Positions 1 through 62,960 of a stretch of 64,000 bases of DNA are shown one piece after another (positions within the stretch are counted from its first letter, which is position 1; every line of letters begins with the position of its first letter). Under the pieces are notes generated by a model. That model saw only the letters and a list, made by a program, of their open reading frames with translations. It did no database searches and was not told the DNA's origin. The DNA is taken from NCBI GenBank assembly GCA_965655095.1, contig OZ296657.1:27838001-27902000 (forward strand). Direction: 5' to 3'. Source of the DNA: Haplodiscus bocki (Eukaryota). The translations under genes and the position numbers were made by a program.

Positions 1-1706
1 GCGTATTTCGTAAAAAACTGGCAGACCGGCTGGGCTCGAGATATATCTTTTAAGGTTTAGTAGCATTTTGATGAAATGCCCAAATGATCAACATAGGGGC
101 ATTGCGCTGCCCGAATATGTAACGAGTTTTTCCCTCATCCGTGAACCTGTGATTTTCCCGCCTTCCCTGGAAAAAAAACAACTTTTAATTATAAAAAATT
201 TTCTTTAGCTTCTATAAAATTTCTTTTCCGCTGAATCTTCTAAATTTGGTGTAGAAAATTCAAGAGTAGGATAAATACAGGGACCTCAAGTCCCTTCCAC
301 CTGTCGATGCAGTTTAAAAAGTAAATGCTTGGTTGTATATGGCATATACTACTTTTTTAAAAGTATATTCTTTTTCTTCTGCTTGCCCAATCTCCGTCAA
401 TTTGAAGAAGTTTATTCTGTTTCTTTGTACTGAACACTTTTCTCCTGGATTTTTCATTTTACGCTTTTCACCTGGCAAGTGGCAAATCTGAACGACATCT
501 CCCTAAAAATTTTGATCCTTGTGACCAACAAAGTGAGAATTACGGCGTTATTTTTACATAATGAAAAACACACGCGCAGGAAATACATGAATATATGATA
601 CATGAAAGTCTATAATACATGTATAAATGATAGATGAAAAAACCTATACATGCCAGCTCACTGGTTCAGACCATCCAAATTATTCTCTAGACCTCACCTA
701 TTTGTGACCAAAGGCCACCAATATACCAAGTAGCGATTATATTTGCCATTCGTTATATTATCCGAATAGTGAAATATTATTACGATTCATTATGATTGCT
801 TTAGCAGAACGAGATCAATTGTAAAGTTGCATTATTGAACGATTTTACTTTTGAGCCTTTGTGGATACAAGTCTCAGATATATTCATGCTCTTTTTTGGG
901 TGTAAGTTAATGAAACGGATTCCTAGGTGAATTAGTTGAAGTGTTTTTATATTGGTTGTGAGTGATCAAAAGGTTCATGATCGTTTAGAAGAACTCAACT
1001 CATAAAAATGACAATAACATTCAAAATAGTTACCTTTCTGAAAAGTTTGTACATACTTTGTAACTGCGATCATGAATCATTTTCATCTTCTTTTAAAATC
1101 GTAATATTCAAATAAATATCACAAGATTCGCAAATGGCCCGAAGTTTGAAAGATGGACTTTCAGTTCAAATGATGATTTCAAAGACTCCTATTTTGATAA
1201 CTTTTACTTCGGTTTTTTAAAGCTTCCCTCCGTGTTTTTTTTTACTAAAGTCGTGTTTCATTGAGTGACCACAAAAAGATTAACTGTCATATTTTTAATG
1301 CTCGTTCAGTGGTTGTTGCAAATTGGAGCTGTTTTCTATGCGGATAATTCGGTGTTTTCCACATGATATGAAAAAAAGTAGCGAAAGCGACTTTTATTTT
1401 TTTTTCATTTTCCATTAAACCACAAAAATTTCTTAGCAGAGTGGTAAAAATGAGTAACTTTTGAACTTCTAAATAGCCAAAATGAGGGGCAAAACATTAT
1501 GTCATCAAATGGAATAAATTAAGCCAATGAATTTGTTCCGTATTAGGAATAATTCACTCCATTGTCGCAATTAAGTCGTTTTGCAACAACGGCAATATTT
1601 TTGTTGGAGTACTTGTCAGAGCTCAAAATATTTCCAGCCTTCTGTCCTGAAACGGTTTTCTGAATGAAAATTGACGGTTGTTTAACTGCATCACGACAGT
1701 CCCACC

Positions 1707-2006
1707 TGTCGTACCGGCTACGTGGAGACTAGAGGATTCGCGATTGCGCCTCGAACTGGACGCTTCACTGTTGCCAGTGGATTCCATTTCAGTCCGACTC
1801 GCTAGCAAAACTCACAGTTCTTCCACTCTCATAAGTATCGGATCAGTTGCTTGTTTGATCTTTTAGTCGACTGACGCCAAGGTAAGCTCATCAGCGGGTG
1901 TTTCGTCTAATACGGGCTCCATTTCCGTTTCCTGCCTTAATCTCAGCTCAATAGTTTCAGAGGAACTATCAAGTGTTTGCGTGCCGGTTTCAGTCTCTTC
2001 ATTCAT
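1707..2006 (-). pseudogene. Decayed LTR-embedded ORF (putative Gag N-terminal portion)
   Basis: Minus frame from ATG at 2006: MNEETETGTQTLDSSSETIELRLRQETEMEPVLDETPADELTLASVD*KIKQATDPILMRVEEL*VLLASRTEMESTGNSEASSSRRNRESSS. In frame with track ORF 1623-1808; two in-frame stops; preceded by TTTTTCCGCAG. Confidence 0.55.
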
Positions 2007-2414
2007 TAACTGCGGAAAAATCCGAGGGTATTGAAAATATTGAATTTTAGTGTGAGCTGAGGTTTAGCTATAGTGATCTGATAATTAAACAGAGAGTATA
2101 AGTGTACAAATCCATGTCAATACTGATAGTATCAAAGCAAGGCTGAAATTTAGGTTCCGAGGTTTCATTCTCAACAGAGTATCATGGTTGTGTTCTCAGT
2201 GACGTTTTCGCTTGATCTGCTTCGGGTAGTCGCGCCTAGTCAGTTGTGTCTTAATTGCTGTCGCAATTAAGTCACGTGACTTTTTGGGTGCTTCTTTTTG
2301 GACATTTTCACACCTAACCTTTACATTAAATCAACCAGCACCAATTATCCACATTGAATGACGCATTTCTATATCGCACCTTCTTTTGTATTTAACTTTT
2401 CATGGATTTGACCG

Positions 2415-3190
2415 CATGAGTGATGTGATAATAGGCTCACTAATTACGCAATATAATTATTTCACGACCAAAAGCACTACTGTAATTGTTCAAGATGGCT
2501 GAAGTGAGCTTATGTGCGGCTCAGTGTAATCAATCGTGTGTACTCAGCACTAACTGAATAAGTACTTGAAATAACGTCGGTAATATTTTTCATACACATT
2601 AAAACGCTTCCCGCACGTATTTAAATAGATAGCACTAGAGTGAGGTCTACTAGAGCTCACTCTCAACAATGCACTGCTGCTGCGGGGAAAGTATGAATAT
2701 TCGAGAGTGAGGTGTGGTACGGCTCACTCTCGATGATGAATTTTGACGAAGTTTTTTTTTATTGCGCTGTAGATTGATGTGCATTATGGATCACTTTAAC
2801 TGGTGATTTTAATCAAAGTTACAACGAACAGCATTTTTGGAGCGAGGTCTAAGCCGGCTCACTCTAATCAACAATTTTCAAAGCCGCTACTACAAATTGC
2901 ACTGAAGTGATGCGTATGGCAGCTCACTTCCGATTGATAGACATTTTATGACAACTGCGGTAGTGATGTATGGTAAAGCTCACTCAATTTAAAGGATTAC
3001 TTTCAGCGTGGATGTACTGCGCTTGAGATTGACGTGTACTGCGGTTCACTCTAAATTGTAATTCATTTGTAGTTCGGTTATAGCTGCAGGAAGTGAAGTG
3101 TGCTATTCCTCACTTCCGGGTGATTGTCATATTTATGGTTAAATTCCGTAACATGAATAGCTTCAGGTGAGGAGTGTTTAAGATCGTTTT
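2415..3190. repeat. Regularly spaced array of AGTGA-N13-TCACT palindromes inside the solo LTR
   Basis: Left arms start at 2419, 2503, 2639, 2706, 2773, 2841, 2906, 2962, 3028, 3092 (degenerate at 3166). Always 13 nt between arms; spacing mostly 64-68 bp. Confidence 0.85.
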
Positions 3191-4819
3191 CCAATTTTAT
3201 AGATAGTACATAATCGCGTGCATATCGTTAGGAGAGGAAGTAAGAAGACATAATGGCGTTTGTATTGCTTGTATATAATGCTGCATATATTCGTTTGTAT
3301 TAAGTGATACTAGATATACGTAGAGGCTTCATTATGGGACATTGGCTAATCGCATAGTATAATTATATAGTTCGTATTTCCTTCATGCGAGCATGACACC
3401 ACCACAATTGATGAACAACCTGAGAAAATTACAGAAAATTGCAATGTTCTACCAGGCAACTCACCCCTCTCACAAAAATCTCATGAATCTCACAAGGAAT
3501 CTATCCTTTCAACAATTTTTACAAGGAATGCTGTAAACGTCTCGAAGAAGCCGGTCGAAATGCAGCTGCTCCGTAGAGAAATTCATAATTTGCGAAACCC
3601 AGGAGAGGATCCCTTGAATAGTTATCCACCGGAGAGTCTAAAATGTAGGGTTCTTTTGTAAGGCAGACGTCTCTCATAAAAAGTTCGATTGAAATGCAAT
3701 TTATTTGAATTAGAATATCAAACGTTTTTTGCAATTCTTTACCAAGTGATAACATGGAAATTACTGAATGTAAAATCTTTTGGATTAAGTGAAATTTGAG
3801 GAATTCGATGCATACCCGCCTACAATTTGATGCGCAAATCTCCGTCCTTTTTCTACATGTACATTGGGGCTAGACTGTTTCAGGAATCTGCTTCATTTAT
3901 TCAACTAAGTATTGATAACATGAAAAAAGGTGGCCCATATTAACTGCAATTAAAAAACTTTAAACTCTCAAAACAGCTGATGTTAGTAATCAAGTTGTCA
4001 GAATTGATTTTCAGCCTCCCTGTATCGTCCGTCAGTCAACAAAACTGACATTTCCTGTCTATCTGAAGTTTTATGAACAGCAAATTCTACATTCCAATTT
4101 TGAAAGTTATCAGAGAATATTTTAGCGAAATGGTGAGATTTTCACTTTAATGTTTAAAATCAGTGGCATTATTTCTAGAAATGATAAGATAACTTTCTGA
4201 AGTGGGATTGCTCACTCATTTTTTACTGTCAGCTGTTATGGGAGCTTGAAACTTTTACGCGTGCTTATTTTCTTGGGCTTCCTTGTAAGAGGAAGAAATT
4301 AAATAAAGATGGAGTTATTTATCAAGACTAAATGACAACCAAAAATTTGCCAGAATAATTTTGGAGAAACTAATGTTGTGTCCTCCGTAAACCATGTTTT
4401 CAGTAATTTCAATAATTCTCTGTCGGCGCAGCAGATAAGTACTTATTCGTTAACAATCAAATGACTACTTGGAGTCCAGGGATCACCACAGCATTCTTAA
4501 AAAAACAACCAACGAAACATCAACACCAATAAGCTTACACGTATTTCCAGTTGAAATCATTTGTCGGTTGATGTCACGTAGCCAACTTGCTGCATTTTTT
4601 ATGTAATCTCAGAGCACAAATAGGTCGGAAACGACCAAAGTAGGTACTGCCTGTAAGGGTCATGACAACAGTGTATTTCAAGGGGGAGCTTTTGATATTC
4701 TGAAAATTTTTCTAGTTTTCTCCCGGAGTTTTTAGCATGAGAAAGGTGGGTGTTTACTATTATTTTGATTGAAAAAAATGTTGGGTCTCTTTGGTGTTCT
4801 GGAAAATTTTGAAAAAAGT

Positions 4820-4965
4820 GATGATCACACCATGATTATGCCATAAACCATGGCAATTCTGCCAAGGAACATGGCCACATGGCGTCATCATGGCATGATC
4901 TTGACCATACTTCGCCATAATCATGGTATAATTAAGCATTGTGGCAATGTTTTTCCAACTCGGGA
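4820..4965. repeat. CATG-rich dispersed repeat copy
   Basis: CATGATTATGCCATAAACCATGGCAATTCTGCCAAGGAACATGGCC... is similar to 50870-50955 (CATGATCATGCCATGAATCACGGCGACCATGCCAAGAAACATGGTC). Confidence 0.6.
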
Positions 4966-5365
4966 TAGCAAATTATATCTGGTGGTGAACGCAGGTATTA
5001 TGCTATAGATCAGTCTCATTAAATTCTCTGACGCTTGGAAAGTAGTGGGAAGGAGAATAAAGTGTGCTGATTAGAACCGGTATATAGATAGTTAAACGTG
5101 CTATCATTGTGGAGGTTATCTTTGGTAGTGTCAAAATGTCCATAGAAGAAACAAATTCCGGCTTGAGGTCTCAGAAACGATCAATCTTTTTCTGCGCTGC
5201 ATCAAAGATTTTAAAATTTCTAGCGCTGTTGATTGTTTTTCCCCAGAATATATAACCTTTACATAGAAGAAATAATTCGGCACCGATGAGAACTGAAACA
5301 GCCCTAAATCACAGATTTATCGACCTGAATTTTTGCTGGTCAGCACGTTGCCGTTGAATGTTAAA

Positions 5366-5397
5366 AACAAGAAGGCCCGCTAGCACCGGCATATTTT
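5366..5397 (-). mobile_element. 3' terminus of dispersed Helitron-like repeat family
   Basis: Reverse complement matches AAATATGCCGGTGCTAGCGGGCCTTCTTGTT, the family end motif seen 7 times in the window. Confidence 0.55.
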
Positions 5398-8049
5398 CAG
5401 CCCAGTTACAATTTTTTTAAATCAACTATTGCAAAAAGTTAAGAAACGAGAATACTGTTTTATATCTAGATTTTCCACAGACGTCAATTCCACCTCTGAT
5501 TCGTACAATTCCTGGCTTTATTGATCTATCAGGGCTCCGAAGCAAAGTATTAAACTCGAGGTATTTTTCTGAGTCACTTTCTGAAAATTCTGAGAAAAAC
5601 CACCACAAGTTGCATTTTTGCCAATTTCGGCTATGAGAGTACGAATGCAGGCAACATATTTCGGAATATGCTTATCGAGTAACCTTATACACAGATAAAC
5701 TTGTCTACTGAGACATTGATGGAAGAAGTTCAGTCGGTAGTTTTGGAGACATATGAGTTGGAATCTTGAGACACATCACATTCATCTGAATGTTTTGGAA
5801 TTCTTAGCCAATCGAGTTTCCGCTAAGAACCATGAAGAAGCATCATACATATAGATAACTTTCGGCAATTTCGGCCTTTCAAATTTCTGAAGAAAGGATG
5901 GAATGACATTGTATGGGTTTTGAATCATCTTGTACAAAATCAAAGTTGTTAATTGAGACCTTGGCGGAAAAAATCCCGACAGTTGCTTTGAGGTGAACCG
6001 AGTTTGAATATCAAGACGAATCATAACAATGTTAAAATGTTGGCTGTATTGGCTCATCAAATCTCCGTTGCAAGGAACCAAATGAATTCTTTGGCAATCA
6101 AGTAACTTCATACGAGTAAAAAATATCGATTGATGCCCTGATGGACGAAATGCAGCCAATAGTTTAGGCGAACGAAAGCTTTGATTCTCAAAACAGTCAA
6201 AAAAATTTGCATTTTCTGGACGTTTCAGTCATTAAGGTACCTGATTTCAGGAATGTTTCGCAAAAAATTATTGAATGATGCTCTTCAATTGCAAAATTGT
6301 TTAATAAAAACTGAATGTGAGAAATTCAGGTTGTTTTGAAAAGAAATGCAGACAAATCGAACAAAAATGGATTTTTTGGCATTTTCTGTCTATCAATGTT
6401 GCGTTGAGAAAAACCAAACGCAAAAATGACTGTCTCGTACGGTTTACAGCGGCTCAAAGTGTCGATTGATACCTTGCTGAATGAAATGCAACCAGTGGTG
6501 TTTGTGAGAAGATTTGTTTTCCAGGAAAAATTACAACACCTCCCCATTTTGGCTCTATCGGTCCATAAAGTTTGCGAAGCTTGGAGATTTTCCTAGAGCA
6601 ACATCCTTGAACGATGTTCTGCGGATAGAAAAATGTTGAGTGAGACCGTAATAAAGTTTATCGAGGTGGGTATTTCGAAAAGAATCAATTCTTTTTATCA
6701 CACAATAAAGCAAATATTTACAATTTGCGCGTACAAAGTTTCCGGTCGCATAAACCCAACACAAAATTCGAGTGAATTTTTAGAAGCTGAAAAACGCCAA
6801 CTGAGACATTGGTTGAAGAAATTTTACCGGCAGTTCTGTAGCCTGCAATTCAACATTTAAGTTTGAATTCCGAGAAAAATCTTATTATGCACTTTTTGGT
6901 TGAATCCGGCCGAAAAGGTTCCCATGGAAGAACCGGTATCTAAAACATCAATGTTGGAGGAACTTTTGGAATGTTAGAAAAAGTCGACGAAGGCAATGAT
7001 GGAAAGGGAACAGCTGGCAGTTTGGAAAGAAACATTTTGATTGTGAAAGTTTTTCTTACGTAAGCGGAGGTTTGGCTTCTTTCAGTCAAAGGAGTTTTTA
7101 CTGGAAAGACCAAATCGCAAAAAAAATAGTTAGTTAACAATTTTTTCAATGGTGACAACAGTTGAGTGAGACGTTGACGGATGAAATTCATCAGGTAGTT
7201 TAGAAGTAGATTTCATTATGTTTTCAAATTACAAAACTATCTGTCTGATATTTTTAAACAAAGTTGCTCCTTGCTTCAGGTGCCATGTACTTAAACTGAA
7301 AAACTTGGAAAAAGCGGAAAGTTGGCATGTGAGAAATAGTCAATTGTGAGCGTGATCGGAGAAGTGTAGTCTGTCGTTATGGAAGAAAATGACTCAGAAA
7401 GTCAAGAAAAACTTTTATTTTTGTTTCTAAAGCCCTGTCGGTCTCCACGGATTAAGTAAAAAGCTATGTATTCCCGGAGAATGTAAATTGAATTTTTGAT
7501 TTTTCAGGCACAGATGGGTAAAAATTAACAGGAACTCCAGAAATGTTTTCAGATTAAACAATTCATTTTTTAAAAAGGGAATTCATTTTTACAAAAAATG
7601 GTAAGTTTTTTGGATAAATGAAAAGTTTCGAAAATACCGTTTTTCCCAGTTTCTCTAGAAGAATAGAGCAAATTAACTTTACTAAGTGATGCATAAAAAT
7701 GAAAGGTTTTTTGAAAACTGAAAAACCCTAAAACACATCAAATAAACTATTGAGGGACAGAAAAGTCAAAAAGTGTGTTACAGTTTTGAAAACTCAAAAC
7801 AGGCCAAAAACCTTTTGTTGCCTTCTAGATCGGAGCTACTCATTTGCAGTGACACCGCTTATATGTATCATACAAGACGGTAATTAGTCTGCAACACGAA
7901 GTTTGCGTGAGTTTTGCACATTCTGGAAAGAGAAAAGTGCTCTACTCAATTGTTTGTTTTCTTTTCCGAAAGTTTATGGATTGATATCAAAACAACTTGA
8001 GAACAGATCAAAACCAACGCTGCTTCTTTGTTCTGTGCGAAAACTTCAG

Positions 8050-8500
8050 TGAATCATCGGATGGTATCACCAAAAAAATTCGAAAATTTTTTTCTCACAA
8101 TCCCTAAAAATTAGTGAGGGGCCGTTTTTGTATTCTTGATAGTCTCTGTTGTTTCTGAGAGTTTACGGTGCTGCTCATTTGTTGGGTGCAAGCTTCTTGG
8201 TGAACTGAGGAGTAGGGTATCACAAAAGTCTAAAAATCCAAAACTTTTTGTCTCCAGAAAAATTTCATGACGGGGCTCTTCTGGTGCTTCTAAAAGTTTC
8301 TGGATGTATCAAAAAACTACGCTTAACGGTGTCTCATATTACCGAAAAGGTTCACAGAAGGGCCTTTCTGGTGTTTGCGGGGACCTGATTGTGCTTGGCA
8401 AAAATTGCTGTTGCATGCGTTGGAAAAATTGGCCGGGGAAAACAATGATGGAAAAAAGTTGAAACTTTGTCGTGATTTTGAAAAAAATAATGATAATAGA
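8050..8500 (-). repeat. Degenerate copies of the ~120-bp satellite found at 61270-62960
   Basis: Motifs such as TTTTTCTCACAATCCCTAAAAATTAGTGAGGGGCC and TTTTTGTCTCCAGAAAAATTTCATGACGGGGCTC resemble the satellite reverse complement TTTTGTCTCACAGTGCCGAAAAATTTCGTAGGGGAACC. Confidence 0.5.
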
Positions 8501-9549
8501 AAGAAACCGAAATTTTCATTTTTTGCTTTTTCATTTCATAAAGCAACAACTAAAAATTGGCGGAAAATAATAATTTTGACAGGAGTAGAAAAAAACAATG
8601 CAAACAATTTCAAAATCGTAACTTTGAAGTAAAAAGTCGAGAAAATGCTTGGATTCAAATCCGTACCCAGTGTTTCAGAATCCTGATTTCTATCCATTTT
8701 GCCATGGGAACTAATGGAATTTCAGACAAACGTCAGTCAAATCATAAACCTATATGAAAGATTGGAACTCGGACATAATATTGATGGAGAAGTTTTTGTC
8801 CTTACCGCACTGCCGAGACCATTTTTTTTAAAAACAAAAATAGTTGGCAAAATTACACTGAAAAGAAGAAAAGAAAGAAACAAGGCCCTACTGAATAGCT
8901 ATTTTTTCGCAGAATTTGAAAGATGTGGCAAAAAAATTTATTAAAGAAACAGAGCTGCTTTTTGTCCGAGGAATGGGAATTCAAATAAGTGGTTTAAAAG
9001 ATAGTACCTGAGTCATCTTTATTCTCACAACATAAATTCAAATATCCATTTGTTGAATGGCTTCCATTTATGTCAAAAAACGATATTTCAATAAAAGGTT
9101 TCTTTTTGACCATGAGGAAAAAACGAACAGGAAATAAAATGCGCTGACTTCGAAAAATCTTGCTTTGAGTGGATAAAGAAATACTTGTTCTCCTGTGTGG
9201 AGTTTTAGTATTTAGGCGCTCCAAACAAACACTCAAACGAGCGAAACGACAACCAAATAAAAAACCGTCTCGTTTCTCCTTTTCTCAGATGCAATTTTCA
9301 TAATTTTATTATTAGGCGCAGTTGCATTGCATTTTTTCCCGTCAGAACAGCCCAGAAAAGGTTGATTGAACAAACAACAAATGATTTAATTATAAAAACC
9401 ACTTTTGAGAAAAAGAAAACTGCCGATGAAGATCTTGAAGGAAATTTCAGGCCGGCGGCTTTCGGAGTTCGAAAATCGACCGAATAACAACTATAGTAAG
9501 ATAACTTCGCACTTTTGGCATATCAAGATTCCAATCTCAGGAGAAATAT

Positions 9550-11330
9550 CAGAGAAAATTTAATGTAAGAGTCATCTGAAATTATAATGCTGTCAACTCA
9601 CACCTTGACTGAAGAACTCAAAGCTATACTTTTCGAGAAGAGTAAATTGGAAAATGGGTATTGGAATATACTGGAAATACGTTTGTTCGTTTTGGCCAAT
9701 CATGTTTCCGATTCCAATTAGGAAACAATTTTTATGTTTTCGGAAATTTAGTGGATCTCCACAAGTAAAGAGCTATCAATTGACACCTTGAGGAAAAGGT
9801 GAAACAGGTAGGTTTGAAGAGATATAAGTTTATTTACTGAGTTTTTTCGAAACTAATGGCACTTTCTGGCATTTCTGGTCAAACAAATTTTGACTGGACT
9901 CAGTTAAAGCAAAAATTTGTAAACTGTATTTTCTAACACATGTAGAAGCTTCAAAATTACACATTTGGGGAAGGAGTCATGTCAGTATTTTGGAGAAACA
10001 CGAGTTTGGAAGCCGAGAAGCGTCCGTATGGATTAGTTTTAAAACCATTTTCCCACTACTAGGAATTTAACACAAAAAATTGAATTGATAATTTTCAATT
10101 GTAATACTCTTTGAAGAGCAGAAAACGTTTGACTCCAACTGTGGTGGAAGAAATTAAACCCGTAGTTACGGCGATCTTTGAGTTTGGCTACCCAAATAAA
10201 CCAATATTGTAAAATTTTCTTGCAAAGATTGGAGTACAGGGATTCTGCTGCAGTGAAAAACTTCAAAGATTTTTTAATCGAACAGACTTCGAAAAATTCG
10301 AAACTTTCGATTCAGACGTTGATGAAAGCAATCAAACATGTAAGCACGGAGAATATCGAGTTTGATTATCGAAATGAATCATTAGTAATAACTCTTCTTT
10401 GAACTTTTGAGATACGGAGAGTGCATCGAATAAAACAAAATTCTCTTTTAGGAAAATTCCACGGAAAAGAAGGATTTTTCGATCGAGATTTTGATGAAAT
10501 GAATGCAACTTGTAGTTTTGAAGAAGTGAGATTTTGAAAGTGAATGAATCAATATTAAAAGCACTTTATGAAATTTTCCGTACTTTTGTTTGGCAGACTG
10601 ATGCATGGAACAAAAACAACGATTTCTTATTCGTGGCCTCCACTACACGTTGTTCGATTTCGACGGAGAAGTTGATGTACGAATTGAAACCTGTGGTTGT
10701 TTTTGGTAAACTTGGCCCATCAGAAATATGATGTATTGCACAAACTGGATAATCCTCCTTCGGAATCGGTCACTACAATTGAGAGGCTGTCTATTGAGAC
10801 GTTTATGACACAACTGTGGCCTGTATTTTTGGGCATAAATGAGTTAGATGATAGAAAAAATTTTTCATTAAAAAAACCTTTCTGGAAAAATTAGACTATC
10901 GGAATTTTGATGCATATAACAAATATAGTGCTATTCAATCGAATACTCCTTTAGAAGTTCGAAACTTTCGACTGAGACCTTGATGGAACAAATCAAGTCT
11001 GTAGTTACGGAGAAAATGACATTCAGTATCGTGATTTGTCATTTTAATTAAATCTTTCAGGAAATTTTGTATGTTAGGTTTTCAAATGGATGGAACAAAA
11101 TTGACAATCGTCCAATCGAACAGTTCTTCAGAAGTCGATAGTTTTTGATTGAGACCCAGGCCATAAAATTTGACCCTGTAGTCTTGCAGAGAAGTGAATT
11201 TCACTACTAAGAATTCAAAGAGTAAATGTTTTTTTGGGAATCCCTCAACTTGGAGAACCTTGAGCTCTAGCTGCAGCAGGATACTGTCGAAGAATTATTG
11301 TAACTTTCAGTTCTGGAAAAACTGGGAGAA
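9550..11330 (+). repeat. Highly diverged ~180-bp tandem repeat
   Basis: Recurrent core AAACTTTCGATTGAGAC.TTGATG.AA.AAAT.AAACCTGTAGTTACGGAGAA near 10123, 10301, ~10475, ~10655, ~10785, 10962, ~11140. Confidence 0.6.
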
Positions 11331-11569
11331 AGAAATAAATTGTTAACAGAAAACTGAAAAAAGTTCATTTGTTTTAATATATTACTAAACTTCTCTACGG
11401 ATTTTCAAACCTTTCTTTCAGGTTCCATCGAAATTGTAGAAGTTTTCCCATTTTTCACAGAAGATTTTGATAAAGAAGTTTGTTTTCAGTTACGTCTGAA
11501 ACTAATCACTTTTTGAGGTAAAAGCCCAGTTTCTTTTGAGTCTTTATAAAAGTGTAAGCAATGCAGCCG

Positions 11570-11640
11570 AAAAAGAGATTCGAACCCGCCATCTCTGGCT
11601 TCCCAACCGCTAAACATGGGGACACCCCACGCATATGTAT
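11570..11640 (-). mobile_element. tRNA-derived SINE head-like fragment
   Basis: Minus strand ...GTTTAGCGGTTGGGAAGCCAGAGATGGCGGGTTCGAATCTC with Pol III B-box GGTTCGAATC; no complete cloverleaf. Confidence 0.4.
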
Positions 11641-12216
11641 TATGCAATGCCCCATAGATTCTCCTCTGCAACACGACAATCAGTGCGTCATGGCCAAAAT
11701 CAGGAAAAGGAAAAACTCCGCCTACTGAAATGAACATTTTTTCTGAAAACTTTTTTCTACGGAGAGTAATAATTTCGTTGTCAGTCTGTGAAACATAAAA
11801 TTATTGTCTCTCATGTGTTTAGTCAAAAGATCAAATATGAGCGTGATTTGAGTCTCACCTTACCAGAGAAGTTCATCAGGTCTTTATTGTCTTTACCTGT
11901 GAGATTGGAGAAATTTTGTAATGGACTTTGACTAGCTAACTCTATGTTTTCGGGGATGGTTATGTTGAACTAAGACATTTGAGTATTTGAGAGTGTTACT
12001 TTGACAGATGAAAATTTTACCTGAAGTTGGCAACACATTTTCGGTTTCTGAAATCTTGATGTGTTTCTCCCTGTTGTTTACTTTGATGAGTTTGTCGATG
12101 GATCTTTGTTAAAACTTCCATTAGCTGAAAAAGGTGCAAATCACGAACGAGATAATTTTTTTCGGATCCTAATCGTTTGCTAATATCGCATTTTTTGTGT
12201 TTCGAGTGGAAACAAA

Positions 12217-18882: not shown

Positions 18883-19730
18883 TGGTGACAGGACCAAACG
18901 CCTGACAAGAATTTCTCGAATTCTTCTCTGGGCAAATTCCAACTCATCGTGAACCTACACAATCAAGACACATGATTAGACAACTGTCGAGAGACACCAC
19001 ATTACCTGCATTGGAAAACACCCAAAAACGAGCATCCAATTACCATAACACTTCAATTAGCAGATTAGCTGAGGCAATCCCCGAAGTAGCGTCGCAACAA
19101 CCACCTACCACATCTCCAATAGCAAAACTAGCATCCACAAGCACATTAAAGTTTGATTGCAAGAAAGAGAATTTCGAACTATTCGAAGACTTTTTCCATA
19201 CAATGTTCAGAATGCAACCGGAGACGCCTGATGCAATGAAAATCAACCAGTTTCACGCACATTTGGGGAAATTTGCAAAGTTTTCGAAACATCAATGCAA
19301 CCATCAAAAAAATCTTGAAGACGTACTCATAGTTTTTTTGACGAAAATATGTTAAACCCGAATCACGAGAAACTGCTAAACAAAAATGGCACAAGCTCAC
19401 TTTTGACCCACATACAAAATCGCTCTCAGACTTTTTAGAGGAATCAAATGAGTACGCAGAACGAGCAATTGGTGATAATGCCCAACAAGTGAATGACAAT
19501 TTCCAAAACGCCAAAATGCCACCACATTTGAAGATGTCATTCAAGTTAGCATACCGCAAAAGTGGCATGTACGACCAGATAGTAGCCCATCTAGAAAAAA
19601 AACTAGCAGTTAGTGGCATAGAAAGTGACCGAAAACTCCCTATTCCCACTATGTCAGTAGCGGTAACAAGAGACAACGAAAGTAGACCAGGCTTTTCCAA
19701 GACATCATGCATTTACTGTAAAAACCCGGG
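18320..19730 (+). pseudogene. Decayed gag-like ORF starting in the LTR, truncated at the zinc knuckle
   Basis: Track ORFs 18395, 18972 and 19489 join via stops and frameshifts: ...FDCKKENFELFEDFFHTMFRMQPE..AMKINQFHAHL..., TAKQKWHKLTFDP..KSLSDFLEE, AKMPPHLK, ending in CIYCKNPG (start of a CX2CX4HX4C knuckle). Confidence 0.75.
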
Positions 19731-19734
19731 CTTT

Positions 19735-20830
19735 ACTTGGCTTGTTCAGCGTATCCGCATTCAATTGCAAAGAAGAAAGTGTGGCTTTTCGGTATTGACT
19801 ATTCATTTACAATTAGAAAATTCCTCCTTGAGGCCTTGGAAGAAAAAATCAAGTAAGTGGTTTCGAAGGAAAAGGAGTTTGAATATCGAAACAACTCCCT
19901 ACTGGTCGCTTCTTTCAGCATTTTCAATCTATGAGAATTCTGTTGCCAAGCGAACATTAGCATTTCAACATTAAAAAGAGAAAAAAATCCAAGTTTTAAG
20001 GGTTGGCTGACCTTCTTGAGTTCGAAAAATGTCGGTCACACATTGGTAGATTAATTGTCTTTGCAAAAAATTCAGCTTGAAGACCGAAGAAATTTTTTAC
20101 TGCTGGCCTTTATTGGCCCATTACAGATACCATGCTTTCTTGCAAATTATCAGAAATTGACTTGTCTTTGGTGTATGCTTTGTAATAGTGAAAAAATGCA
20201 CATTCAGGCCTTAAAGGAATATTTGAGGCCATAAAAGAAAACTTCAGTCTAGTAGTTACGGAGGAAAGGAGTTTGAAGTTTGAGGAAACTACATACTAAT
20301 GGAATGTTTTTGACATTTTCGGTGTCTGATATTTTTCTTCACGGAAAAGAAGCCTTTTTTAAGGTATTAGCTGAACTTCTACAAGTTGACATTTGTCCTT
20401 TAAGACAACGATAAAGGTAATCAAAGCAGTTACTTTGGAGACTTATGAGTTCAAATGTCGAGAAAGTCGAGACAAAAGGAAAGTTTTGAAGACTTCTGTT
20501 TCCGTAAATTCTGACAAAATTATGATCATGCCTGAGCAAAATTTTGAACGCGTTTTGAAAGATTTAAATCATTCAGTTGGGACCTTGAAGCAATGAATCA
20601 TTGCGGTTGTTAAGGAAAGAGGTGAATTTTCAAATCGAAAAGGGTAACTATTAATCTGTTTGTTTTGAAATTTCGGTCGCTCAAATGTCTTATGCAAAAA
20701 ACAAAGTGCCATAAAATAGTACTGATTGCTCTTATACAAATGTAAACGGTTGATGAGGACAATATTAGGTGAATTCAAACCCTTAGATTTGGTTAAACTT
20801 GAGTTTAACAATCGAGATAGTTCAGTACTA
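19735..20830 (+). repeat. Second cluster of the diverged ~180-bp repeat
   Basis: Cores such as CTAGTAGTTACGGAGGAAAGGAGTTTGAA (~20250), GTAAGTGGTTTCGAAGGAAAAGGAGTTTGAATATCG (~19855) and GCGGTTGTTAAGGAAAGAGGTGAATT (~20603) match the 9550-11330 unit. Confidence 0.5.
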
Positions 20831-56145: not shown

Positions 56146-56456
56146 GGTCGTGTTGTTTTTGAGTTCAGTTGTTTAGTGAGTGAGTTTGAGATACCTTTTC
56201 ACCTCGTGGTTTCACACTTTGCTTTCACACTTGATTTTCACACTTGTTTTGAGGCAGCGGAAATGAATTACGTCGCTTTTGTGAATTGCGTCTACTTATC
56301 TAATTAAATTGCATCTAGAAACGCGGAAATATTAATGTCTTCATTGAGAACGCTAATTACCTTTAATCGATGGGCATAATCATATTATAGATTGCTACTG
56401 GTTTATAAAGAATGTCGTTAGGCCACACTAATTATTAAATTCGGAGTGACGTCCTT

Positions 56457-57170
56457 GGGGTGAAATGTACATGGGGTGAAACGTACATGGGGTGAAACGT
56501 ACGTGGGGTGAAACGTACGTGGGGTGAAACGTACGTGGGGTGAAACGTACGTGGGGTGAAACGTACGTGGGGTGAAACGTACATGGGGTGAAACGTACGT
56601 GGGGTGAAACGTACGTGGGGTGAAACGTACGTGGGGTGAAACGTACGTGGGGTGAAACGTACGTGGGGTGAAACGTACGTGGGGTGAAACGTACGTGGGG
56701 TGAAACGTACGTGGGGTGAAACGTACGTGGGGTGAAACGTACGTGGGGTGAAACGTACGTGGGGTGAAACGTACGTGGGGTGAAACGTACGTGGGGTGAA
56801 ACGTACGTGGGGTGAAACGTACGTGGGGTGAAACGTACGTGGGGTGAAACGTACGTGGGGTGAAACGTACGTGGGGTGAAACGTACGTGGGGTGAAACGT
56901 ACGTGGGGTGAAACGTACGTGGGGTGAAACGTACGTGGAGTGAAACGTACGTGGGGTGAAACGTACGTGGGGTGAAACGTACGTGGGGTGAAACGTACGT
57001 GGGGTGAAACGTACGTGGGGTGAAACGTACGTGGGGTGAAACGTACGTGGGGTGAAACGTACGTGGGGTGAAACGTACGTGGGGTGAAACGTACGTGGGG
57101 TGAAACTTACGTGGGGTGAAATGTACCGGGCTGAAATGTCCCGGGTTGAAATGTCTTCGGGGTGAAATGT
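56457..57170. repeat. 16-bp minisatellite (GGGGTGAAACGTACGT)n, roughly 40-45 copies, within the MULE TIR
   Basis: Nearly perfect tandem units; the opposite TIR has only ~5 related units (GACATTTCACCCCACG) at 54946-55024. Confidence 0.97.
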
Positions 57171-60100
57171 CATGTAACCAATATATTGTTTCTTGCCAAA
57201 AAACAATACAATAATTGTATTGTGGAGATGCAATATTTTTGCAATAAATTATTGGTCACCCTTGGTACCAACACGAGGCTAATAAATGTGACTGTGATGA
57301 GACCAGCGATACATTAAGTAAAGGATGTATCTCTTTAAAATTGTTGTGTGCAATTATGAATAAACGATTGGATATGATCGTTACCGGTCACAGTTAAATT
57401 TTTGACCTATTTTTGAAAATTATGCAATGAATTTATAAAACTAAATGAGAGCTCAAATAAACGAAGAATAGTCCGATATGTTGCACAAACCCTGATGTAT
57501 TATATTAGTATTTTTTTTATTGATGTAAACAATTTCATAGTCAGGTCAAAGATTGAGGTCAATCAACATATGTTGTAATTTATTCTACAGAATCACTCAA
57601 GAGCCGTCATATCAAACAATAGTTAACTCACTTGATCCCATGTGCAATATTTTGCTCAACACAAACGAGACAGGTCAAAATCAAGTCAACGCCTATTTTT
57701 TTTGTATTCTGACTTTTCTCATGAAGTGAAGAATGAAGTCATGAGCGCATAGACATAAGGTTTAACACAAGAATCTATGCTTTGTGGAAAAAAATACCGA
57801 GGCTAAACAATTCTTCAACAACACTTGCAACATATGGGTGCCTACCTGTAAACGAAAACCAAAAAATAGCCAGCGTAAAAAAGACGCCGAAATCAATCGA
57901 AACCAGGAAAGTTCATTTTTTTGAATTGATGTACGCTCAAAAGCTAACCGAAAAATTCTTTAGTTTTTAAAACATTATATTTCCGGTTGATTCACACCGG
58001 AACCTTGAAGTCTATTATTCAGTTTCCTCTGAGAACACGTTCAATAGGTTGCACTTACCCTAATTGAATAAATTGTCGACTTTTTCGAGTACAAGTAAAC
58101 ACATTTCATTGAAAAAAGCAACTGACGACTTCTGCAACTTTTATTAGTGACCTCCAAGTACGATAAATCAAATGAGTTTGATGGAATGCGAGAGATATAA
58201 TTGAAGGAAACGATGCTGGCAAAAGACCAAACATAAAACTCCTTTGCTTTACTTTTTACATGATATGAGATTTCACTAGAGAAAGATAAGTCAGAACTTC
58301 GGCGCTCCCTCCGTTGATCCTTAGGAGAACGATTTTTCGAAGTAATCATGAATCGGCAATGTTTGTATAACAGTCTACAAGAAAGCACCTTCGAAGAACG
58401 AGAACTTATAAAACTTTTAGTTCTTCATTTAGATTTTGCACATTTTTAGTCACAAAGTTATAAAACAGCTGAAACCTGCCAATAGGAAGGCCTCTAAAAA
58501 GTAGGCAGCTGAATTTGGGCTTGATGAACACAATTTGACTGGTAATTGTAATTGAACACACTTTCAATGAACGACACATTTAAAATTTTTCACTTTAACT
58601 TCGAAGGTACCAATTAGAGTATGGAAGTTCCTCCGAAAACATTTCAAGTTGCAAGTTTATGAATAAGCGCTAGATGGACCCAATACAGCTAGTAGTCAAA
58701 GAGGAAAACAACATTGAGCAATGACGAAAGTGCTGAGTTCACTTCTTCGTTTTCGTATCGTTATCGTACAAAAAGTACCAGTCAGGGTATCCAAATAACA
58801 TTGCTGAACGTCTAGACCATGAGTAGTTCAATCGGCAGTGGACCAAAATTTTGCGAAAATTATACACTGAAGTACACTTTTAATGATTGATCGAAATAAA
58901 ACCATCACTGGGTTTCAGAATTTCTTCTATAGTTTCAAATACGGACCACTGTAGTTGTTGTCATCAAGCAACACGAGGGGACAGACGTAACACAAAGCCA
59001 CGTGAAAAAGTTTTGACAGGCAACAACGCAGCTTGAACCAACTCCAACTCGTACTTTCCAAGCAAATGCATAAATAGCGCGTTGGAGAAGCACGCAAATG
59101 AAACGAGAGTCGTCTGTAACACACATCACTTCGCTTCACTTGCTTCCTTTGTAATTATTCATTCAAAACTATTTTTTTTTTCGTCTGTTTTAATGTAATC
59201 ACGTGGTGGTTCCCCACTTTTTATTTTCCTTTTCATCAGTTTGGCGTTACGCAAACCGTGGTATACTTACTTTAGCCATTAGTTCACATCGTATTTAAAG
59301 CTATAGTTAAACATGTGACATCACCTTCGGAGACAACTTGGTTGGATGACAAACGGAAAGACATCCGAAAAGGATTCAACTTATGGATGACCGCAATTTC
59401 ATGACAATTGTCTGATGTACAGCTTACACTTCTGTTGCCTGGAAATGTCGGAAATACAGTAAAAAAATTGTCTCACTCAGTTGGATTTGTTTCACAGCAT
59501 TTTGTTGTTGAAAAGTTGGCGATAATAAAACTTGAATCAATTCAGTTGGGTAAACAAACTTGATTCACAGCAATGAAAACAATCAAATTGAAACTCAGAT
59601 CGAGGAGGAAGGCTACGGGAACTCTTTCTAACATCTAGACAGTTTTTTTCTTCAATTTTCAAGCGAATTCACAAGTCTTTTAAAACACTATATTTGCAAG
59701 GGTTAGATAAGAAGTATATTTTGTCTTCACAGCAGGTAGAAATTGACATCGCAACGCTATTTGGACCACCATGGAGAAAATTTTCTGACCAAGAATGGCG
59801 ATAGAAATACGATCAACAAAAAATCCTTAGGACGTTACAGCAGTGATTTGAACAAATGCGATCATGGAAACTTCTCTCCGAATGTGGAATAATTTCACTA
59901 ATGACCACATATATCGGCTTACACTTAATTAATAAAGCTGTTGATATGTGATCAGAATGAGGGTGCTCTTTCTAGTCTTGAGATTAAACTAAGACGTGCA
60001 AACCCACACGTACCATAATTAGATAATACGACTTGGACAAACTTTTGGTCAGCGACTGTCCTCAAGTATCCATTCAAATTTTCTTCAGAAAGACGCGGGC

Positions 60101-61269: not shown

Positions 61270-62960
61270 AACAGTTTTTGATACCCGAATTAGTGAAACA
61301 CTAAAGGGTTCCTTTAGGAAGTTTTTCGATTTTCGACACTGTGAGACAAAAAATTTTCGACGGAAAATCTTGATACTCCCCCCTTATCTTATCCAAACTT
61401 TGTCGATACCCGAAATTAATGCAACAGTAAAGGATTCCCCTACAGAAATTTTCGGCACTGTGAGACAAAAAATTTTAGACGGAAAATCTTGACACCCCCC
61501 CCCCCCCCTCTTGTCCAAACTTTTTCGATACCCGAAATTATTGCAACAGCAAAGGATTCCCCTACGGAAATTTCGGCACTGTGAGACAAAAAATTTTAGA
61601 CGGAAAATCTTGACACCCCCCCCCTCTTGTCCAAACTTTTTCGATACCCGAAATTATTGCAACAGCAAAGGATTCCCCTACGGAAATTTCGGCACTGTGA
61701 GACAAAAAATTTTCGACGTTAAATCTTGATACTCCCCCCCCGTCTTATCCATAAACTTTTTCCCTACCGTAAATTTTCTGAAACACAGCACAGAACAGTT
61801 CACCTACGAAACTTTTCGGCACTGTGAGACAAAAAAATTTCGACAGAAAATCGAAAATTGTGGCATAACCCTCCGAAGCATAAAAATTTTCGATACCCGA
61901 AATTAGTGAAACACTAAAGGGTTCCTCTACGAAATTTTTCGGCACTGTGAGACAAAAACTTTTCGACGGAAAATCGCGATACTTCCTCCCCCCTCTTATC
62001 CAAAATTTTTCGATACCCGAAATTAGTGAAACACTAAAAGATTCCCCTACGAAATTTTTCGGCACTGTGAGACAAAAAAATTTCGACAGAAAATCAAAAA
62101 TTGTGACATAACCCTCCGAAGCATAAAAACTTTCGATACCCGAAATCAGTGAAACACTAAATGGTTCCCCTACGAAATTTTTCGGCACTGTGAGACAAAA
62201 AAATTTCGACAGAAAATCGAAAATTGTGACATAACCCTCCGAAGCATAAAAACTTTCGATACCCGAAATCAGTGAAACACTAAAGGGTTCCCCTACGAAA
62301 TTTTTCGGCACTGTGAGACAACAAATTTTCTATAGAAACTCGTGATATGCCCCCTCTTATCCATAAATTTTTTTCGATACCAGAAAACTTCCGGAAAACA
62401 GAAGGGTTCCTTTACAAAGCTTTCCGTTTCGGTCCTGTGAGACAAAAAATTTCGACAAAACCAAGATGCCCCCCCCTCCTATACATGAAAATTTTCGATA
62501 AAAGAATTTTTTGTGAAACACCAAAGTGTTCTCCAATGAAATATTTCGGTACAGTGAGACAAAAACTTCGACGGAAAATCGTGATACTCCCCCCCCCTCT
62601 TATCCATAAAATATTTTTCCCTAGCAGAAATTTTCTGAAACACAGAATGGTTCCCTGGCGAAGTTTTTTCGGTCCTGTGAGATAAAAAATTTTCGACAAA
62701 ACCGTGAAGCTTCCCGCCTCCTTTGCTTGACATTTTTCGATACCAGAATTCTTTCGAAACACAGAAGGGTTCTCCTACGAATTTTATCGGCACTGTGAGA
62801 CAAAGATTTTTCAACGGAGTTTAGTGATATCCCCTTCTTATGCATAAAATTTTTCGCTACCCGAAATTTTCTGATTCACCGAAGTGTTCCCCAACGAATT
62901 TTTCGGTACTGTGAGACAAAAAATTTTGAACGAAAAGTCGTGATACCCCCCTCTTTTGCA
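61270..62960. repeat. Satellite-like tandem array, ~115-125-bp unit, ~14 copies
   Basis: Repeated TTTTCGATACCCGAAATT...AAAGGGTTCCCCTACGAAATTTTTCGGCACTGTGAGACAAAAAATTTTCGACGGAAAATC with variable C-tracts and at least two subtypes. Confidence 0.95.

What the first reader, a model, noticed from the sequence alone, without database searches (positions are those of the whole stretch)
2415..3190. CRISPR-like repeat-spacer array of covarying palindromes inside a retrotransposon solo LTR
Seen: ten units of AGTGA-N13-TCACT (arms at 2419, 2503, 2639, 2706, 2773, 2841, 2906, 2962, 3028, 3092). The arm-to-arm distance is always 13 nt. The period is mostly 64-68 bp, with one 136-bp gap equal to two periods. 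Loops differ in every unit (loose consensus GGTGTG..GGC) and the ~40-nt spacers do not visibly repeat. Outer stem bases change together: TCGAGAGTGA/TCACTCTCGA (2701-2733), AGAGTGA/TCACTCT (2637), GAAGTGA/TCACTTC (2904), GGAAGTGA/TCACTTCC (3089). Inference: an ordinary decaying tandem repeat should not keep only the palindromic arms, the loop length and compensatory pairs, so the array appears selected. Possible roles are serial RNA stem-loops (processing sites releasing ~66-nt RNAs, or packaging/export/localisation signals) or phased sites for a dimeric DNA-binding protein (~6 helical turns apart). No cas or recombinase gene is visible, so the CRISPR resemblance is architectural only.
Basis: partly seen in the sequence, partly recalled or inferred. 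Interest (0 to 1): 0.82.

Follow-up and report, generated by a model that had tools for sequence, protein, structure and literature searches.

The report
Palindrome-bearing repeat array in retrotransposon LTR
The ten "hairpins" are real, but they are what is left of an old 66-base tandem repeat inside the terminal repeat of a very abundant gypsy-type jumping gene; only a short mirror-image motif has been kept by selection, most likely as a repeated docking site for a regulatory protein, and nothing about it works like CRISPR.

Summary
Ten AGTGA-N13-TCACT units lie at the stated places: 6 exact matches against 0.05 expected, 10 with one mismatch allowed.

The host is a 1,692-bp solo LTR (window 1707-3398, TG..CA ends, 5-bp duplication CCACC) of a Ty3/gypsy-type element with over 1,000 candidate copies. 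The element's sense strand is the window's minus strand.

The CRISPR analogy fails. Every copy examined (about 40, at 70-85% identity) has the same units, order, loops and spacers. The array is an old degenerate tandem repeat: a ~66-bp unit plus a ~187-bp three-unit higher-order period.

The arms are under constraint:
- They are 63-93% alike between units, while spacers are at chance level.
- Variants shared between copies are depleted in the arms; singletons are not.
- In the most diverged relative the arms are 86% identical, against 55% for spacers.

Pairing evidence is thin. Compensatory changes between copies are almost absent, unit-specific flank complementarity is modest (P=0.013), and one diverged copy shows a few mirror-symmetric changes. 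Only about 3-5 of 10 units would fold stably as RNA.

The array lies about 400-1,100 nt upstream of a gag start codon that sits inside the LTR. It is therefore probably in U3. Best guess: serial binding sites for a dimeric factor (an enhancer module). Serial RNA hairpins remain a live rival. No RNA data exist.

The parts
1702..1706 (.). Left target-site duplication, CCACC
   Evidence: The same 5 bases recur at 3399-3403. Other copies each have their own 5-bp duplication.
1707..3398 (-). Solo LTR, 1,692 bp, with TG..CA ends. It belongs to a Ty3/gypsy-type retrotransposon whose sense strand is the window's minus strand.
   Evidence: 29 other copies share exactly this span and have unrelated flanks. 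In L042, L043, L044 and L047 a primer-binding site (TGGTGACAGG...) and gag follow the end that corresponds to 1707. L052 shows the order gag CCHC, protease, RNase H, integrase.
3399..3403 (.). Right target-site duplication, CCACC
2419..3114 (.). Array of ten palindrome-bearing units, at positions 285-980 of the LTR in sense orientation
2419..2441 (.). Unit 1, AGTGA-N13-TCACT. Most copies read GGTGA, which gives an outer G.T pair. The stem is 5 bp only.
2503..2525 (.). Unit 2. The right arm is TCAGT in this copy and TCACT in most others. In the diverged copy L031 it is an 11-bp perfect stem with a changed core.
2637..2663 (.). Unit 3, 8-bp stem AGAGTGAG/CTCACTCT
2701..2733 (.). Unit 4, 11-bp stem TCGAGAGTGAG/CTCACTCTCGA. 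This is the archetypal motif GAGTGAGGTGTGGTACGGCTCACTC. The stem is 14 bp in L031.
2773..2795 (.). Unit 5, degenerate (ATTGA/TCACT). The left arm is lost in one subfamily and intact in L031.
2841..2863 (.). Unit 6. It reads AGCGA here and AGTGA in most copies. The flank pairs run up to 4 bp and include a G.T pair.
2904..2930 (.). Unit 7, 7-bp stem GAAGTGA/TCACTTC
2962..2984 (.). Unit 8, 5-bp stem. In L031 it reads AATGA/TCATT, a two-sided change.
3028..3050 (.). Unit 9. It reads ATTGA here and AGTGA in most copies. The right arm is lost in one subfamily.
3089..3117 (.). Unit 10, 8-bp stem GGAAGTGA/TCACTTCC
3166..3188 (.). Degenerate eleventh unit: GGTGA-N13-TCGTT here, TCATT in most copies
1707..2006 (-). 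N-terminal 100 codons of gag, encoded inside the LTR. The ATG is at 2006-2004 and this copy has a stop at 1865-1863. This places the transcription start upstream of 2006 in sense orientation.
   Evidence: 17 of 30 copies are fully open to the LTR end. Third codon positions vary twice as much as the first and second (0.168 against 0.09), and a control region shows no such phase.
2251..2280 (.). Two adjacent conserved palindromes between the array and the gag start: TTAATTGC-N4-GCAATTAA and GTCACGTGAC (an E-box/G-box core). They are likely promoter-proximal factor sites.

Best explanation
Window 1707-3398 is a solo LTR of a high-copy Ty3/gypsy-type retrotransposon. Its middle part holds an old, degenerate tandem repeat. 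The repeat began as a ~66-bp unit and was later duplicated as a ~187-bp block of three units.

In the replicating lineage, selection has kept only a 23-25-bp core of each unit: (G)AGTGA, a 13-nt segment with a few fixed positions, then TCACT(C). The spacers were left to decay.

The array lies about 400-1,100 nt upstream of the gag start codon, and that codon itself lies inside the LTR. The array is therefore most likely in U3, upstream of the promoter. There the ten cores would act as serial binding sites for a sequence-specific, probably dimeric, DNA-binding factor. That would make it an LTR enhancer module of the kind seen as tandem U3 repeats in retroviruses and ERVs.

Shown here: the LTR, its orientation, the repeat origin, the constancy between copies, and the selective retention of the arms. 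Inferred: the U3 placement and protein binding on DNA.
For: - LTR identity and orientation.
- The same ten units and spacers in all copies.
- Tandem origin: the best self-offsets are 187 bp (z 4.5) and 66 bp (z 3.4), and three-unit blocks align at 55-59% (z 4-7).
- Constraint on the arms between units: arm positions are 0.63-0.93 alike, while spacers are 0.2-0.4.
- Constraint between copies: singleton variants are equal in arms and elsewhere (0.86 against 0.84-0.87 per column), but shared variants are depleted in the arms (0.48 against 0.67-0.71; Mann-Whitney P=0.0008, Fisher P=0.04).
- Constraint between subfamilies: against the most diverged relative, L031, arms are 86% identical, loops 62% and spacers 55%.
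- The arm sequence itself, and not only its complementarity, is the same in all ten units. Units with only a 5-bp stem, which fold no better than shuffles, are kept as well.
- Position: the gag ATG lies inside the LTR at 2006, with a codon-phase signature. Conserved CACGTG and TTGCG..CGCAA-type palindromes lie between the array and gag.
- Known analogue: the ERV9/LTR12 U3 has 5-17 tandem ~41-nt repeats of four subtypes that carry recurrent NF-Y/GATA/MZF1 sites (PMC11853044).
Against: - No transcription start, poly(A) site or RNA data exist for this element, so the U3 placement is inferred.
- TATAAA words present in about half of the copies lie upstream of the array in sense orientation, at LTR positions 175 and 198. 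The array could therefore be part of a long leader.
- No factor can be named.
- A 13-bp gap between 5-bp half-sites is unusual for a simple dimer.
- The conserved inner positions (GT on one side, GC on the other) are not mirror-symmetric.
- Unit-specific complementary flanks and the mirror-symmetric changes in L031 (an 11-bp and a 14-bp perfect stem; AATGA/TCATT) are not needed for a DNA site. They fit a hairpin better.
Confidence: 0.42

Rival explanations
1. The array encodes serial RNA stem-loops. U3 is transcribed at the 3' end of the genomic RNA (or the array lies in a long 5' leader). Each unit then forms a hairpin with a 6-11-bp stem and an 11-13-nt loop. The inner stem and the loop edges are read by a protein, the outer stem is free to covary, and the function would be export, stability, packaging or dimerisation.
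For: - Unit-specific complementarity outside the core: native flanks form 2.07 Watson-Crick pairs of 5, against 1.61 when paired with another unit's flank. Contiguous extension is 1.23 against 0.53. The permutation test on the window copy gives P=0.013.
- Different outer pairs occur in different units (G-C or A-T at -1; G-C or T-A at -3).
- The diverged copy L031 has two-sided changes that keep or lengthen pairing in units 2, 4 and 8.
- Units 3, 4 and 10 fold far better than shuffles (z -3 to -7), and the whole array on the sense strand gives z -3.15.
- The conserved loop positions next to the stem are asymmetric.
Against: - Between 30 copies, only 3 two-sided changes occur against 138 broken pairs in the core. 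This is expected for dead copies, so it is uninformative, but it gives no support.
- Five of the ten hairpins fold no better than shuffles in this copy.
- One subfamily has lost an arm of unit 5 and another an arm of unit 9.
- There is no strand bias between G.T and A.C intermediates (86 against 73).
- The independent covariation events number about four, and several are shared through the three-unit duplication.
- There is no Rfam match and there are no RNA runs.
- The sense-strand loops are C/A-rich, which is unlike known nucleocapsid-binding, G-rich packaging loops (general knowledge).
Confidence: 0.3
2. The array is a by-product of replication mechanics with no present function. Fold-back or template switching during reverse transcription created the quasi-palindromes and keeps correcting them, and slippage duplicated them. 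On this view the symmetry is mutational, not selected.
For: - The arms evolve mirror-symmetrically, and in L031 they become longer perfect palindromes (11 and 14 bp). Quasi-palindrome correction produces this pattern (general knowledge).
- Earlier notes describe other LTR families of this genome that also carry palindrome-bearing arrays (these notes are unchecked).
Against: - Correction keeps complementarity, not a particular sequence, yet AGTGA/TCACT is the same in all ten units and in diverged subfamilies.
- Shared variants are depleted in the arms while singletons are not, which points to selection in the active lineage and not to a mutational cold spot.
- The 13-nt distance is fixed while spacer lengths vary from 33 to 61 nt.
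Confidence: 0.12
3. The array is a CRISPR-like or otherwise adaptive repeat-spacer system, with spacers acquired from other sequences.
For: Only the superficial architecture of a conserved palindromic repeat with dissimilar 40-nt intervals.
Against: - The spacers are identical in position and sequence across all copies and subfamilies examined.
- They retain faint homology to each other at the 187-bp register.
- The array is part of a eukaryotic retrotransposon LTR with over 1,000 candidate copies.
- The window has no ORF of 200 aa or more apart from a low-complexity repeat.
Confidence: 0.01

Closest known systems
Tandem U3 enhancer repeats of ERV9/LTR12 (5-17 units of ~41 nt in four subtypes, with NF-Y, GATA-2 and MZF1 sites; PMC11853044). 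The 72/75-bp direct repeats of murine leukaemia virus U3 are a second example, cited from general knowledge.
   Same: - A run of diverged tandem units in the upstream part of an LTR.
- Each unit keeps a short conserved motif.
- Unit subtypes are arranged in a higher-order pattern.
- The array is inherited with every solo LTR.
   Different: - The kept motif here is a 23-25-bp palindrome with a fixed 13-nt centre, not a short asymmetric site.
- The unit number is fixed at ten (perhaps eleven) in all copies seen, whereas it varies in LTR12.
- Neither the placement in U3 nor factor binding has been shown.
Cis-acting RNA elements in retroelement 3' regions and LTRs: HTLV RxRE, HERV-K Rec-responsive element, MPMV CTE, MusD/IAP transport elements (general knowledge)
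   Same: - They lie in or next to U3.
- They are built of stem-loops and are read by a protein.
- They can contain internal repeats.
   Different: - Those are single complex structures or two-fold repeats, not ten near-identical short hairpins.
- No RNA evidence exists here, and half of the hairpins are weak.
CRISPR arrays
   Same: Partly palindromic repeats at a regular period, separated by dissimilar intervals.
   Different: - The intervals are fixed and inherited, not acquired.
- The repeats are only 5-11 bp of conserved arms.
- The setting is a eukaryotic retrotransposon.
- There are no associated genes.
Other palindrome-bearing repeat arrays in LTRs of the same genome, noted earlier in this scan (s1-376425: a 59-nt unit; s1-376539: paired ACGT boxes; s1-359407: the same AGTGA-N13-TCACT motif in another copy)
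   Same: - The same genome and the same kind of host (gypsy-type LTRs).
- Short palindromes repeated at a regular period.
- Arms kept mirror-symmetric.
   Different: - Two of the three have different motifs and unit lengths.
- These notes are unchecked AI notes and were not re-tested here.

Membership tests
Solo LTR of a Ty3/gypsy-type LTR retrotransposon | TG...CA termini and a short target-site duplication | tested here: met
   The LTR reads TGTCG...TGACA and is flanked by CCACC on both sides. Other copies each have their own 5-bp duplication.
Solo LTR of a Ty3/gypsy-type LTR retrotransposon | Many dispersed copies with the same boundaries and unrelated flanks | tested here: met
   41 scored matches out of 1,163 candidates. 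The boundaries fall at 1706/1707 and 3398/3399 in nearly all of them.
Solo LTR of a Ty3/gypsy-type LTR retrotransposon | Full-length relatives with a primer-binding site next to the LTR and the order gag, protease, RT/RNase H, integrase | tested here: met
   A primer-binding site TGGTGACAGGAGTCC lies directly after the LTR in four loci. L052 has zf-CCHC, gag-asp_proteas, RT_RNaseH_2, Integrase_H2C2 and rve in that order. All hits are weak because the copy is decayed, and most fall below Pfam's cut-offs. The polypurine tract and the 3' LTR of the same element were not seen.
LTR U3 tandem-repeat enhancer (ERV9 LTR12 / MLV type) | Tandem units that lie in U3, upstream of the transcription start | tested here: inconclusive
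   The array is 400-1,100 nt upstream of a gag ATG that lies inside the LTR. No start site is mapped, no RNA runs exist, and TATAAA words occur on both sides of the array.
LTR U3 tandem-repeat enhancer (ERV9 LTR12 / MLV type) | A conserved short motif in each unit, kept by selection | tested here: met
LTR U3 tandem-repeat enhancer (ERV9 LTR12 / MLV type) | Binding of transcription factors and enhancer activity | not testable with these tools
   This needs EMSA or pull-down and reporter assays. Words resembling Runx, T-box or KLF sites occur in only 2-3 of the ten loops, so no factor is assigned.
Structured RNA element supported by covariation | Compensatory base changes that keep pairing across homologues | tested here: inconclusive
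   Between 30 copies there are 3 two-sided changes against 138 broken pairs in the core. Between paralogous units there are about four events, and native flanks pair better than cross-unit flanks with P=0.013. A few two-sided changes occur in L031.
Structured RNA element supported by covariation | Folding clearly more stable than shuffled sequence | tested here: inconclusive
   Units 3, 4 and 10 give z -3 to -7, unit 7 about -2, and the rest no better than shuffles. The whole array gives z -3.15 on the sense strand and -1.6 on the antisense strand.
Structured RNA element supported by covariation | Match to a described RNA family | tested here: not met
   No Rfam match at E<=1 in window 1-12000.
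CRISPR array | Spacer content differs between copies or strains (acquisition) | tested here: not met
   The spacers are the same in all copies and subfamilies.
CRISPR array | Near-identical full-length direct repeats | tested here: not met
   Only the 5-bp arms and a few loop positions are shared. Tandem Repeats Finder reports nothing.
CRISPR array | Adjacent cas genes | tested here: not met
   The window has no ORF of 200 aa or more except a low-complexity repeat without any Pfam hit. No dedicated Cas profile search was run.

The most novel reading that the evidence does not exclude
The ten cores are hairpins that act on single-stranded nucleic acid, either on the element's RNA (U3 as the 3' UTR, or a long leader) or on its reverse-transcription intermediates. 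A protein reads the inner stem and the loop edges. The mirror symmetry of the arms is actively maintained. The same solution has arisen repeatedly in several unrelated LTR families of this genome, which would point to a host or element factor that recognises arrays of short hairpins.
Probability: 0.25. Interest if true: 0.6.

Novelty: new member of a known kind. Interest (0 to 1): 0.3.

Why it matters
With over 1,000 candidate copies, this LTR has spread the same block of ten conserved palindromic motifs across a 1.5-Gb genome. If the motifs bind a factor, every solo LTR is a ready-made regulatory module, and the family would be a large source of coordinated cis-regulation.

The case also gives a clean natural experiment. 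Dead copies show neutral decay, while differences between subfamilies show which parts of an LTR are selected. The mirror-symmetric evolution of the arms is the one feature that ordinary enhancer logic does not explain. Earlier notes report it for other LTR families of this genome too.

Tried and rejected
- **Tandem Repeats Finder:** it found no array in 1-8000, because the units are too diverged.
- **Rfam:** no match.
- **Spacer-to-spacer alignment at the 66-bp register:** the result is indistinguishable from shuffles. Homology appears only at the three-unit register.
- **Covariation between copies:** none usable.
- **Strand test using G.T against A.C intermediates:** no bias.
- **First orientation guess (plus strand):** rejected. 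LTR end plus TGG on the plus strand gave unrelated flanks, while the other end gave a shared primer-binding site and gag.
- **Fetching more copies or full-length elements:** The between-subfamily analysis therefore rests on loci L031-L052.
- **Naming a factor:** Runx-like TGTGGT/TGCGGT, T-box-like AGGTGTG and KLF-like GGTGTGG words occur in only 2-3 loops, so none is assigned.
- **Pol III A-box resemblance:** it exists only in this copy's mutated unit 2, so it is rejected.
- **DNA cruciforms:** unlikely with loops of 11-13 nt (general knowledge).
- **Organism:** not identified. The Atlas look-alikes of the integrase piece are from invertebrate animals and fungi.
- **Consensus sequence:** none was built for the LTR or its genes. 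All statistics were computed per copy or per column.

Full report
**1. The observation**

The pattern AGTGA-N13-TCACT occurs six times exactly in the 64-kb window. All six lie between 2419 and 3114 on one strand, against 0.05 expected from shuffles. The arm-to-arm distance is 13 nt in every unit. The periods are 84, 136, 67, 67, 68, 65, 56, 66 and 64 bp. A degenerate eleventh unit follows at 3166-3188. The 136-bp interval holds no recognisable palindrome. Tandem Repeats Finder reports nothing here, and Rfam has no match.

**2. The host sequence**

A search of the window's own 1.5-Gb genome with 2100-3400 gave 1,163 candidates. The 41 scored matches were 78-85% identical. Comparing the window with 29 fetched copies shows that the shared segment is 1707-3398, with unrelated flanks.

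The segment starts with TGTCG and ends with TGACA. It is flanked by the 5-bp duplication CCACC (1702-1706 and 3399-3403), and the other copies each have their own 5-bp duplication.

Searching for either LTR end followed by TGG settled the orientation. The 3398 end is followed by unrelated sequence. The 1707 end, read on the minus strand, is followed in four loci by the same TGGTGACAGGAGTCC and a shared internal region. The element's sense strand is therefore the window's minus strand.

One decayed full-length relative (L052) carries the following domains in this order: a gag with CCHC knuckles, an aspartic-protease motif, an RNase H-like domain, and an integrase with an H2C2 finger and an rve core. 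That is the Ty3/gypsy arrangement. The Pfam hits are weak because the copy is broken.

**3. The array is an inherited, degenerate tandem repeat, not a repeat-spacer system**

In an alignment of 30 copies, every unit, loop and spacer is found at the same place with the same sequence, apart from scattered point changes. The same holds for a 75%-identical subfamily and for relatives down to about 60% overall identity. Nothing is acquired or reordered.

Within a copy, the spacers align to each other no better than shuffled sequence at the 66-bp register (mean score -6.7 against -8.35). The best ungapped self-offset, however, is 187 bp (z 4.5), ahead of 66 bp (z 3.4). The three blocks 2639-2840, 2841-3027 and 3028-3215 align at 55-59% identity (z 4-7), and spacers in that register keep faint homology (z up to 3.3).

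The array therefore grew by duplication of a ~66-bp unit and later of a three-unit block. That block duplication also explains why units 7 and 10 share the GAAGTGA/TCACTTC type and units 6 and 9 share the TTRG...CTAA flanks.

**4. What is conserved**

Averaged over 30 copies, the identity between the ten units of one copy is as follows:

| Region | Identity between units |
|---|---|
| Arm positions | 0.63-0.93 |
| Loop positions 6, 7, 16, 17 | 0.57-0.72 |
| Rest of the loop | 0.24-0.48 |
| Spacers | 0.2-0.4 (chance is about 0.27) |

The kept core is thus AGTGA-n-GT-n8-GC-TCACT. The archetype GAGTGAGGTGTGGTACGGCTCACTC (unit 4) recurs in diverged relatives elsewhere in the genome.

Between copies, most differences are neutral decay after insertion. 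Singleton variants are equally frequent in arms (0.86 per column) and elsewhere (0.82-0.87). Variants shared by two or more copies reflect change in the replicating lineage, and these are depleted in the arms (0.48 against 0.65-0.71 per column). The minor-allele fraction gives P=0.0008 by Mann-Whitney, and shared against singleton variants gives P=0.04 by Fisher's test.

Against the most diverged relative available (L031), the arms are 86% identical, the loops 62% and the spacers 55%. The arms, and to a lesser degree parts of the loop, are therefore under purifying selection.

**5. Is pairing itself selected?**

Between the 30 copies the answer is uninformative. In the core stems, 1,240 cells keep the commonest pair, 61 keep a pair through a one-sided change, 3 through a two-sided change, and 138 are broken. 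That is what dead copies should show.

Between the ten paralogous units there is some signal. The five positions flanking each core form 2.07 Watson-Crick pairs with their own partner flank, against 1.61 with the flank of another unit. Contiguous extension is 1.23 against 0.53. In the window copy, the native total of 26 pairs is reached by 1.3% of permutations. The outer pairs differ between unit types (G-C or A-T at -1; G-C or T-A at -3), which amounts to about four independent events once the block duplication is taken into account.

The diverged copy L031 adds three cases:
- Unit 2 has become an 11-bp perfect stem with a changed core (AAGGAGC/GCTCCTT).
- Unit 4 has become a 14-bp perfect stem.
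- Unit 8 reads AATGA/TCATT instead of GGTGA/TCACT.

Against pairing:
- One subfamily has lost the left arm of unit 5, and another has lost the right arm of unit 9.
- Five of the ten units fold no better than shuffled sequence as RNA on either strand. Only units 3, 4 and 10 are clearly stable, and unit 7 less so.
- The global fold pairs arms of different units with each other.
- G.T and A.C intermediates are equally common (86 against 73), so neither strand is favoured as the RNA.

**6. Position within the LTR**

In sense orientation the array occupies LTR positions 285-980. The last 300 nt of the LTR are coding. A conserved ATG (window 2006, minus strand) opens a frame that runs to the LTR end and on through the primer-binding site into gag. 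In 17 of 30 solo copies all 100 codons are still open. Third codon positions vary twice as much as first and second (0.168 against 0.095 and 0.086), while a neighbouring control region shows no such phase. Earlier notes of this scan describe the same arrangement in other families of this genome.

The transcription start must therefore lie upstream of 2006 in sense orientation. Two well-conserved palindromes lie between the array and gag: TTAATTGC-N4-GCAATTAA at 2251-2270 and GTCACGTGAC at 2271-2280. A conserved CCAAT also lies there. This looks like a promoter-proximal region, which would place the array in U3, 370-1,100 nt upstream of the start.

This placement is inferred. TATAAA words present in about half of the copies also lie upstream of the array, no conserved AATAAA was found, and no RNA run holds the sequence.

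**7. Mechanism**

The most conventional reading fits most of the facts. The array is an LTR enhancer module made of tandem units, each keeping one binding site. A well-studied parallel is the U3 of ERV9/LTR12, which has 5-17 units of ~41 nt in four subtypes with recurrent NF-Y/GATA/MZF1 sites (PMC11853044). The palindromic arms with a fixed gap suggest a dimeric factor.

Two observations favour recognition of the sequence over a requirement for a stable hairpin:
- The arm sequence is invariant across all units.
- Units with only 5 bp of complementarity are retained.

Three features are not explained by a DNA site: the unit-specific complementary flanks, the asymmetric conserved loop positions, and the mirror-symmetric changes in L031. 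These keep the RNA-hairpin rival alive. On that model, U3 serves as the 3' UTR, and the inner stem and loop edges are read by a protein while the outer stem is free to vary.

A third possibility is that fold-back or template switching during reverse transcription creates and corrects the palindromes. This could account for the symmetry. It could not account for the constancy of the AGTGA sequence, nor for the depletion of shared variants in the arms.

My odds are about 0.4 for DNA sites, 0.3 for RNA hairpins, 0.1 for a mutational by-product, and the remainder for something else. The structural conclusions are much firmer, at about 0.9: a solo LTR, its orientation, a degenerate tandem repeat with a selected palindromic core, and no CRISPR-like behaviour.

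**8. Novelty and limits**

Tandem repeats with conserved motifs in LTRs are well known. This is a new example in an unnamed invertebrate-like genome, and its motif is unusual: a 23-25-bp palindrome with a fixed centre.

Limits of the analysis:
The between-subfamily comparison therefore rests on a handful of decayed copies, and L031 is a single locus.
All measures were taken per copy or per column.

Noticed in passing
window 1707-2006, minus strand: The LTR encodes the first 100 codons of gag. A conserved ATG at 2006 opens a frame that runs to the LTR end and through the primer-binding site. It is open in 17 of 30 solo LTRs, and third codon positions are twice as variable as the others. This copy has a stop at 1865-1863.
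   Followed up: yes
window 2251-2280: Two adjacent palindromes are conserved in nearly all copies: TTAATTGC-N4-GCAATTAA and GTCACGTGAC (CACGTG core). They look like promoter-proximal factor sites between the array and the gag start.
   Followed up: partly
L031:500-1360 (a diverged relative of the same LTR): Unit 4 is a 14-bp perfect palindrome and unit 2 an 11-bp perfect palindrome with a changed core. The arms have evolved mirror-symmetrically in this lineage.
   Followed up: partly
window 2639-3215: There is a higher-order period of about 187 bp (three units). The blocks 2639-2840, 2841-3027 and 3028-3215 align at 55-59% identity.
   Followed up: yes
window 5704-11013: A second, unrelated degenerate repeat: 14 copies of a 46-nt core, spaced mostly 172-187 or about 335 bp apart, in two clusters (5704-7385 and 9593-11013).
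   Followed up: no
window 56418-57233, minus strand: A 271-codon open frame made of a 48-nt (16-residue) tandem repeat, TFHPTYVSPHVRFTPR, in a stretch with strong GC skew (0.255). It has no Pfam match and is probably a satellite, not a gene.
   Followed up: partly
window 61745-62311, minus strand: An open frame with four to five copies of a repeat of about 40 residues (PKNFVGEPFSVSLISGIE.FYASEGYVTIFDFLSKFFCLTV). Its nature is unknown.
   Followed up: no
window 18972-19974: Overlapping ORFs with a gag-like look (FELFEDFFHTMFRMQPETPDAMKINQFHAHL). They probably belong to another decayed retroelement.
   Followed up: no
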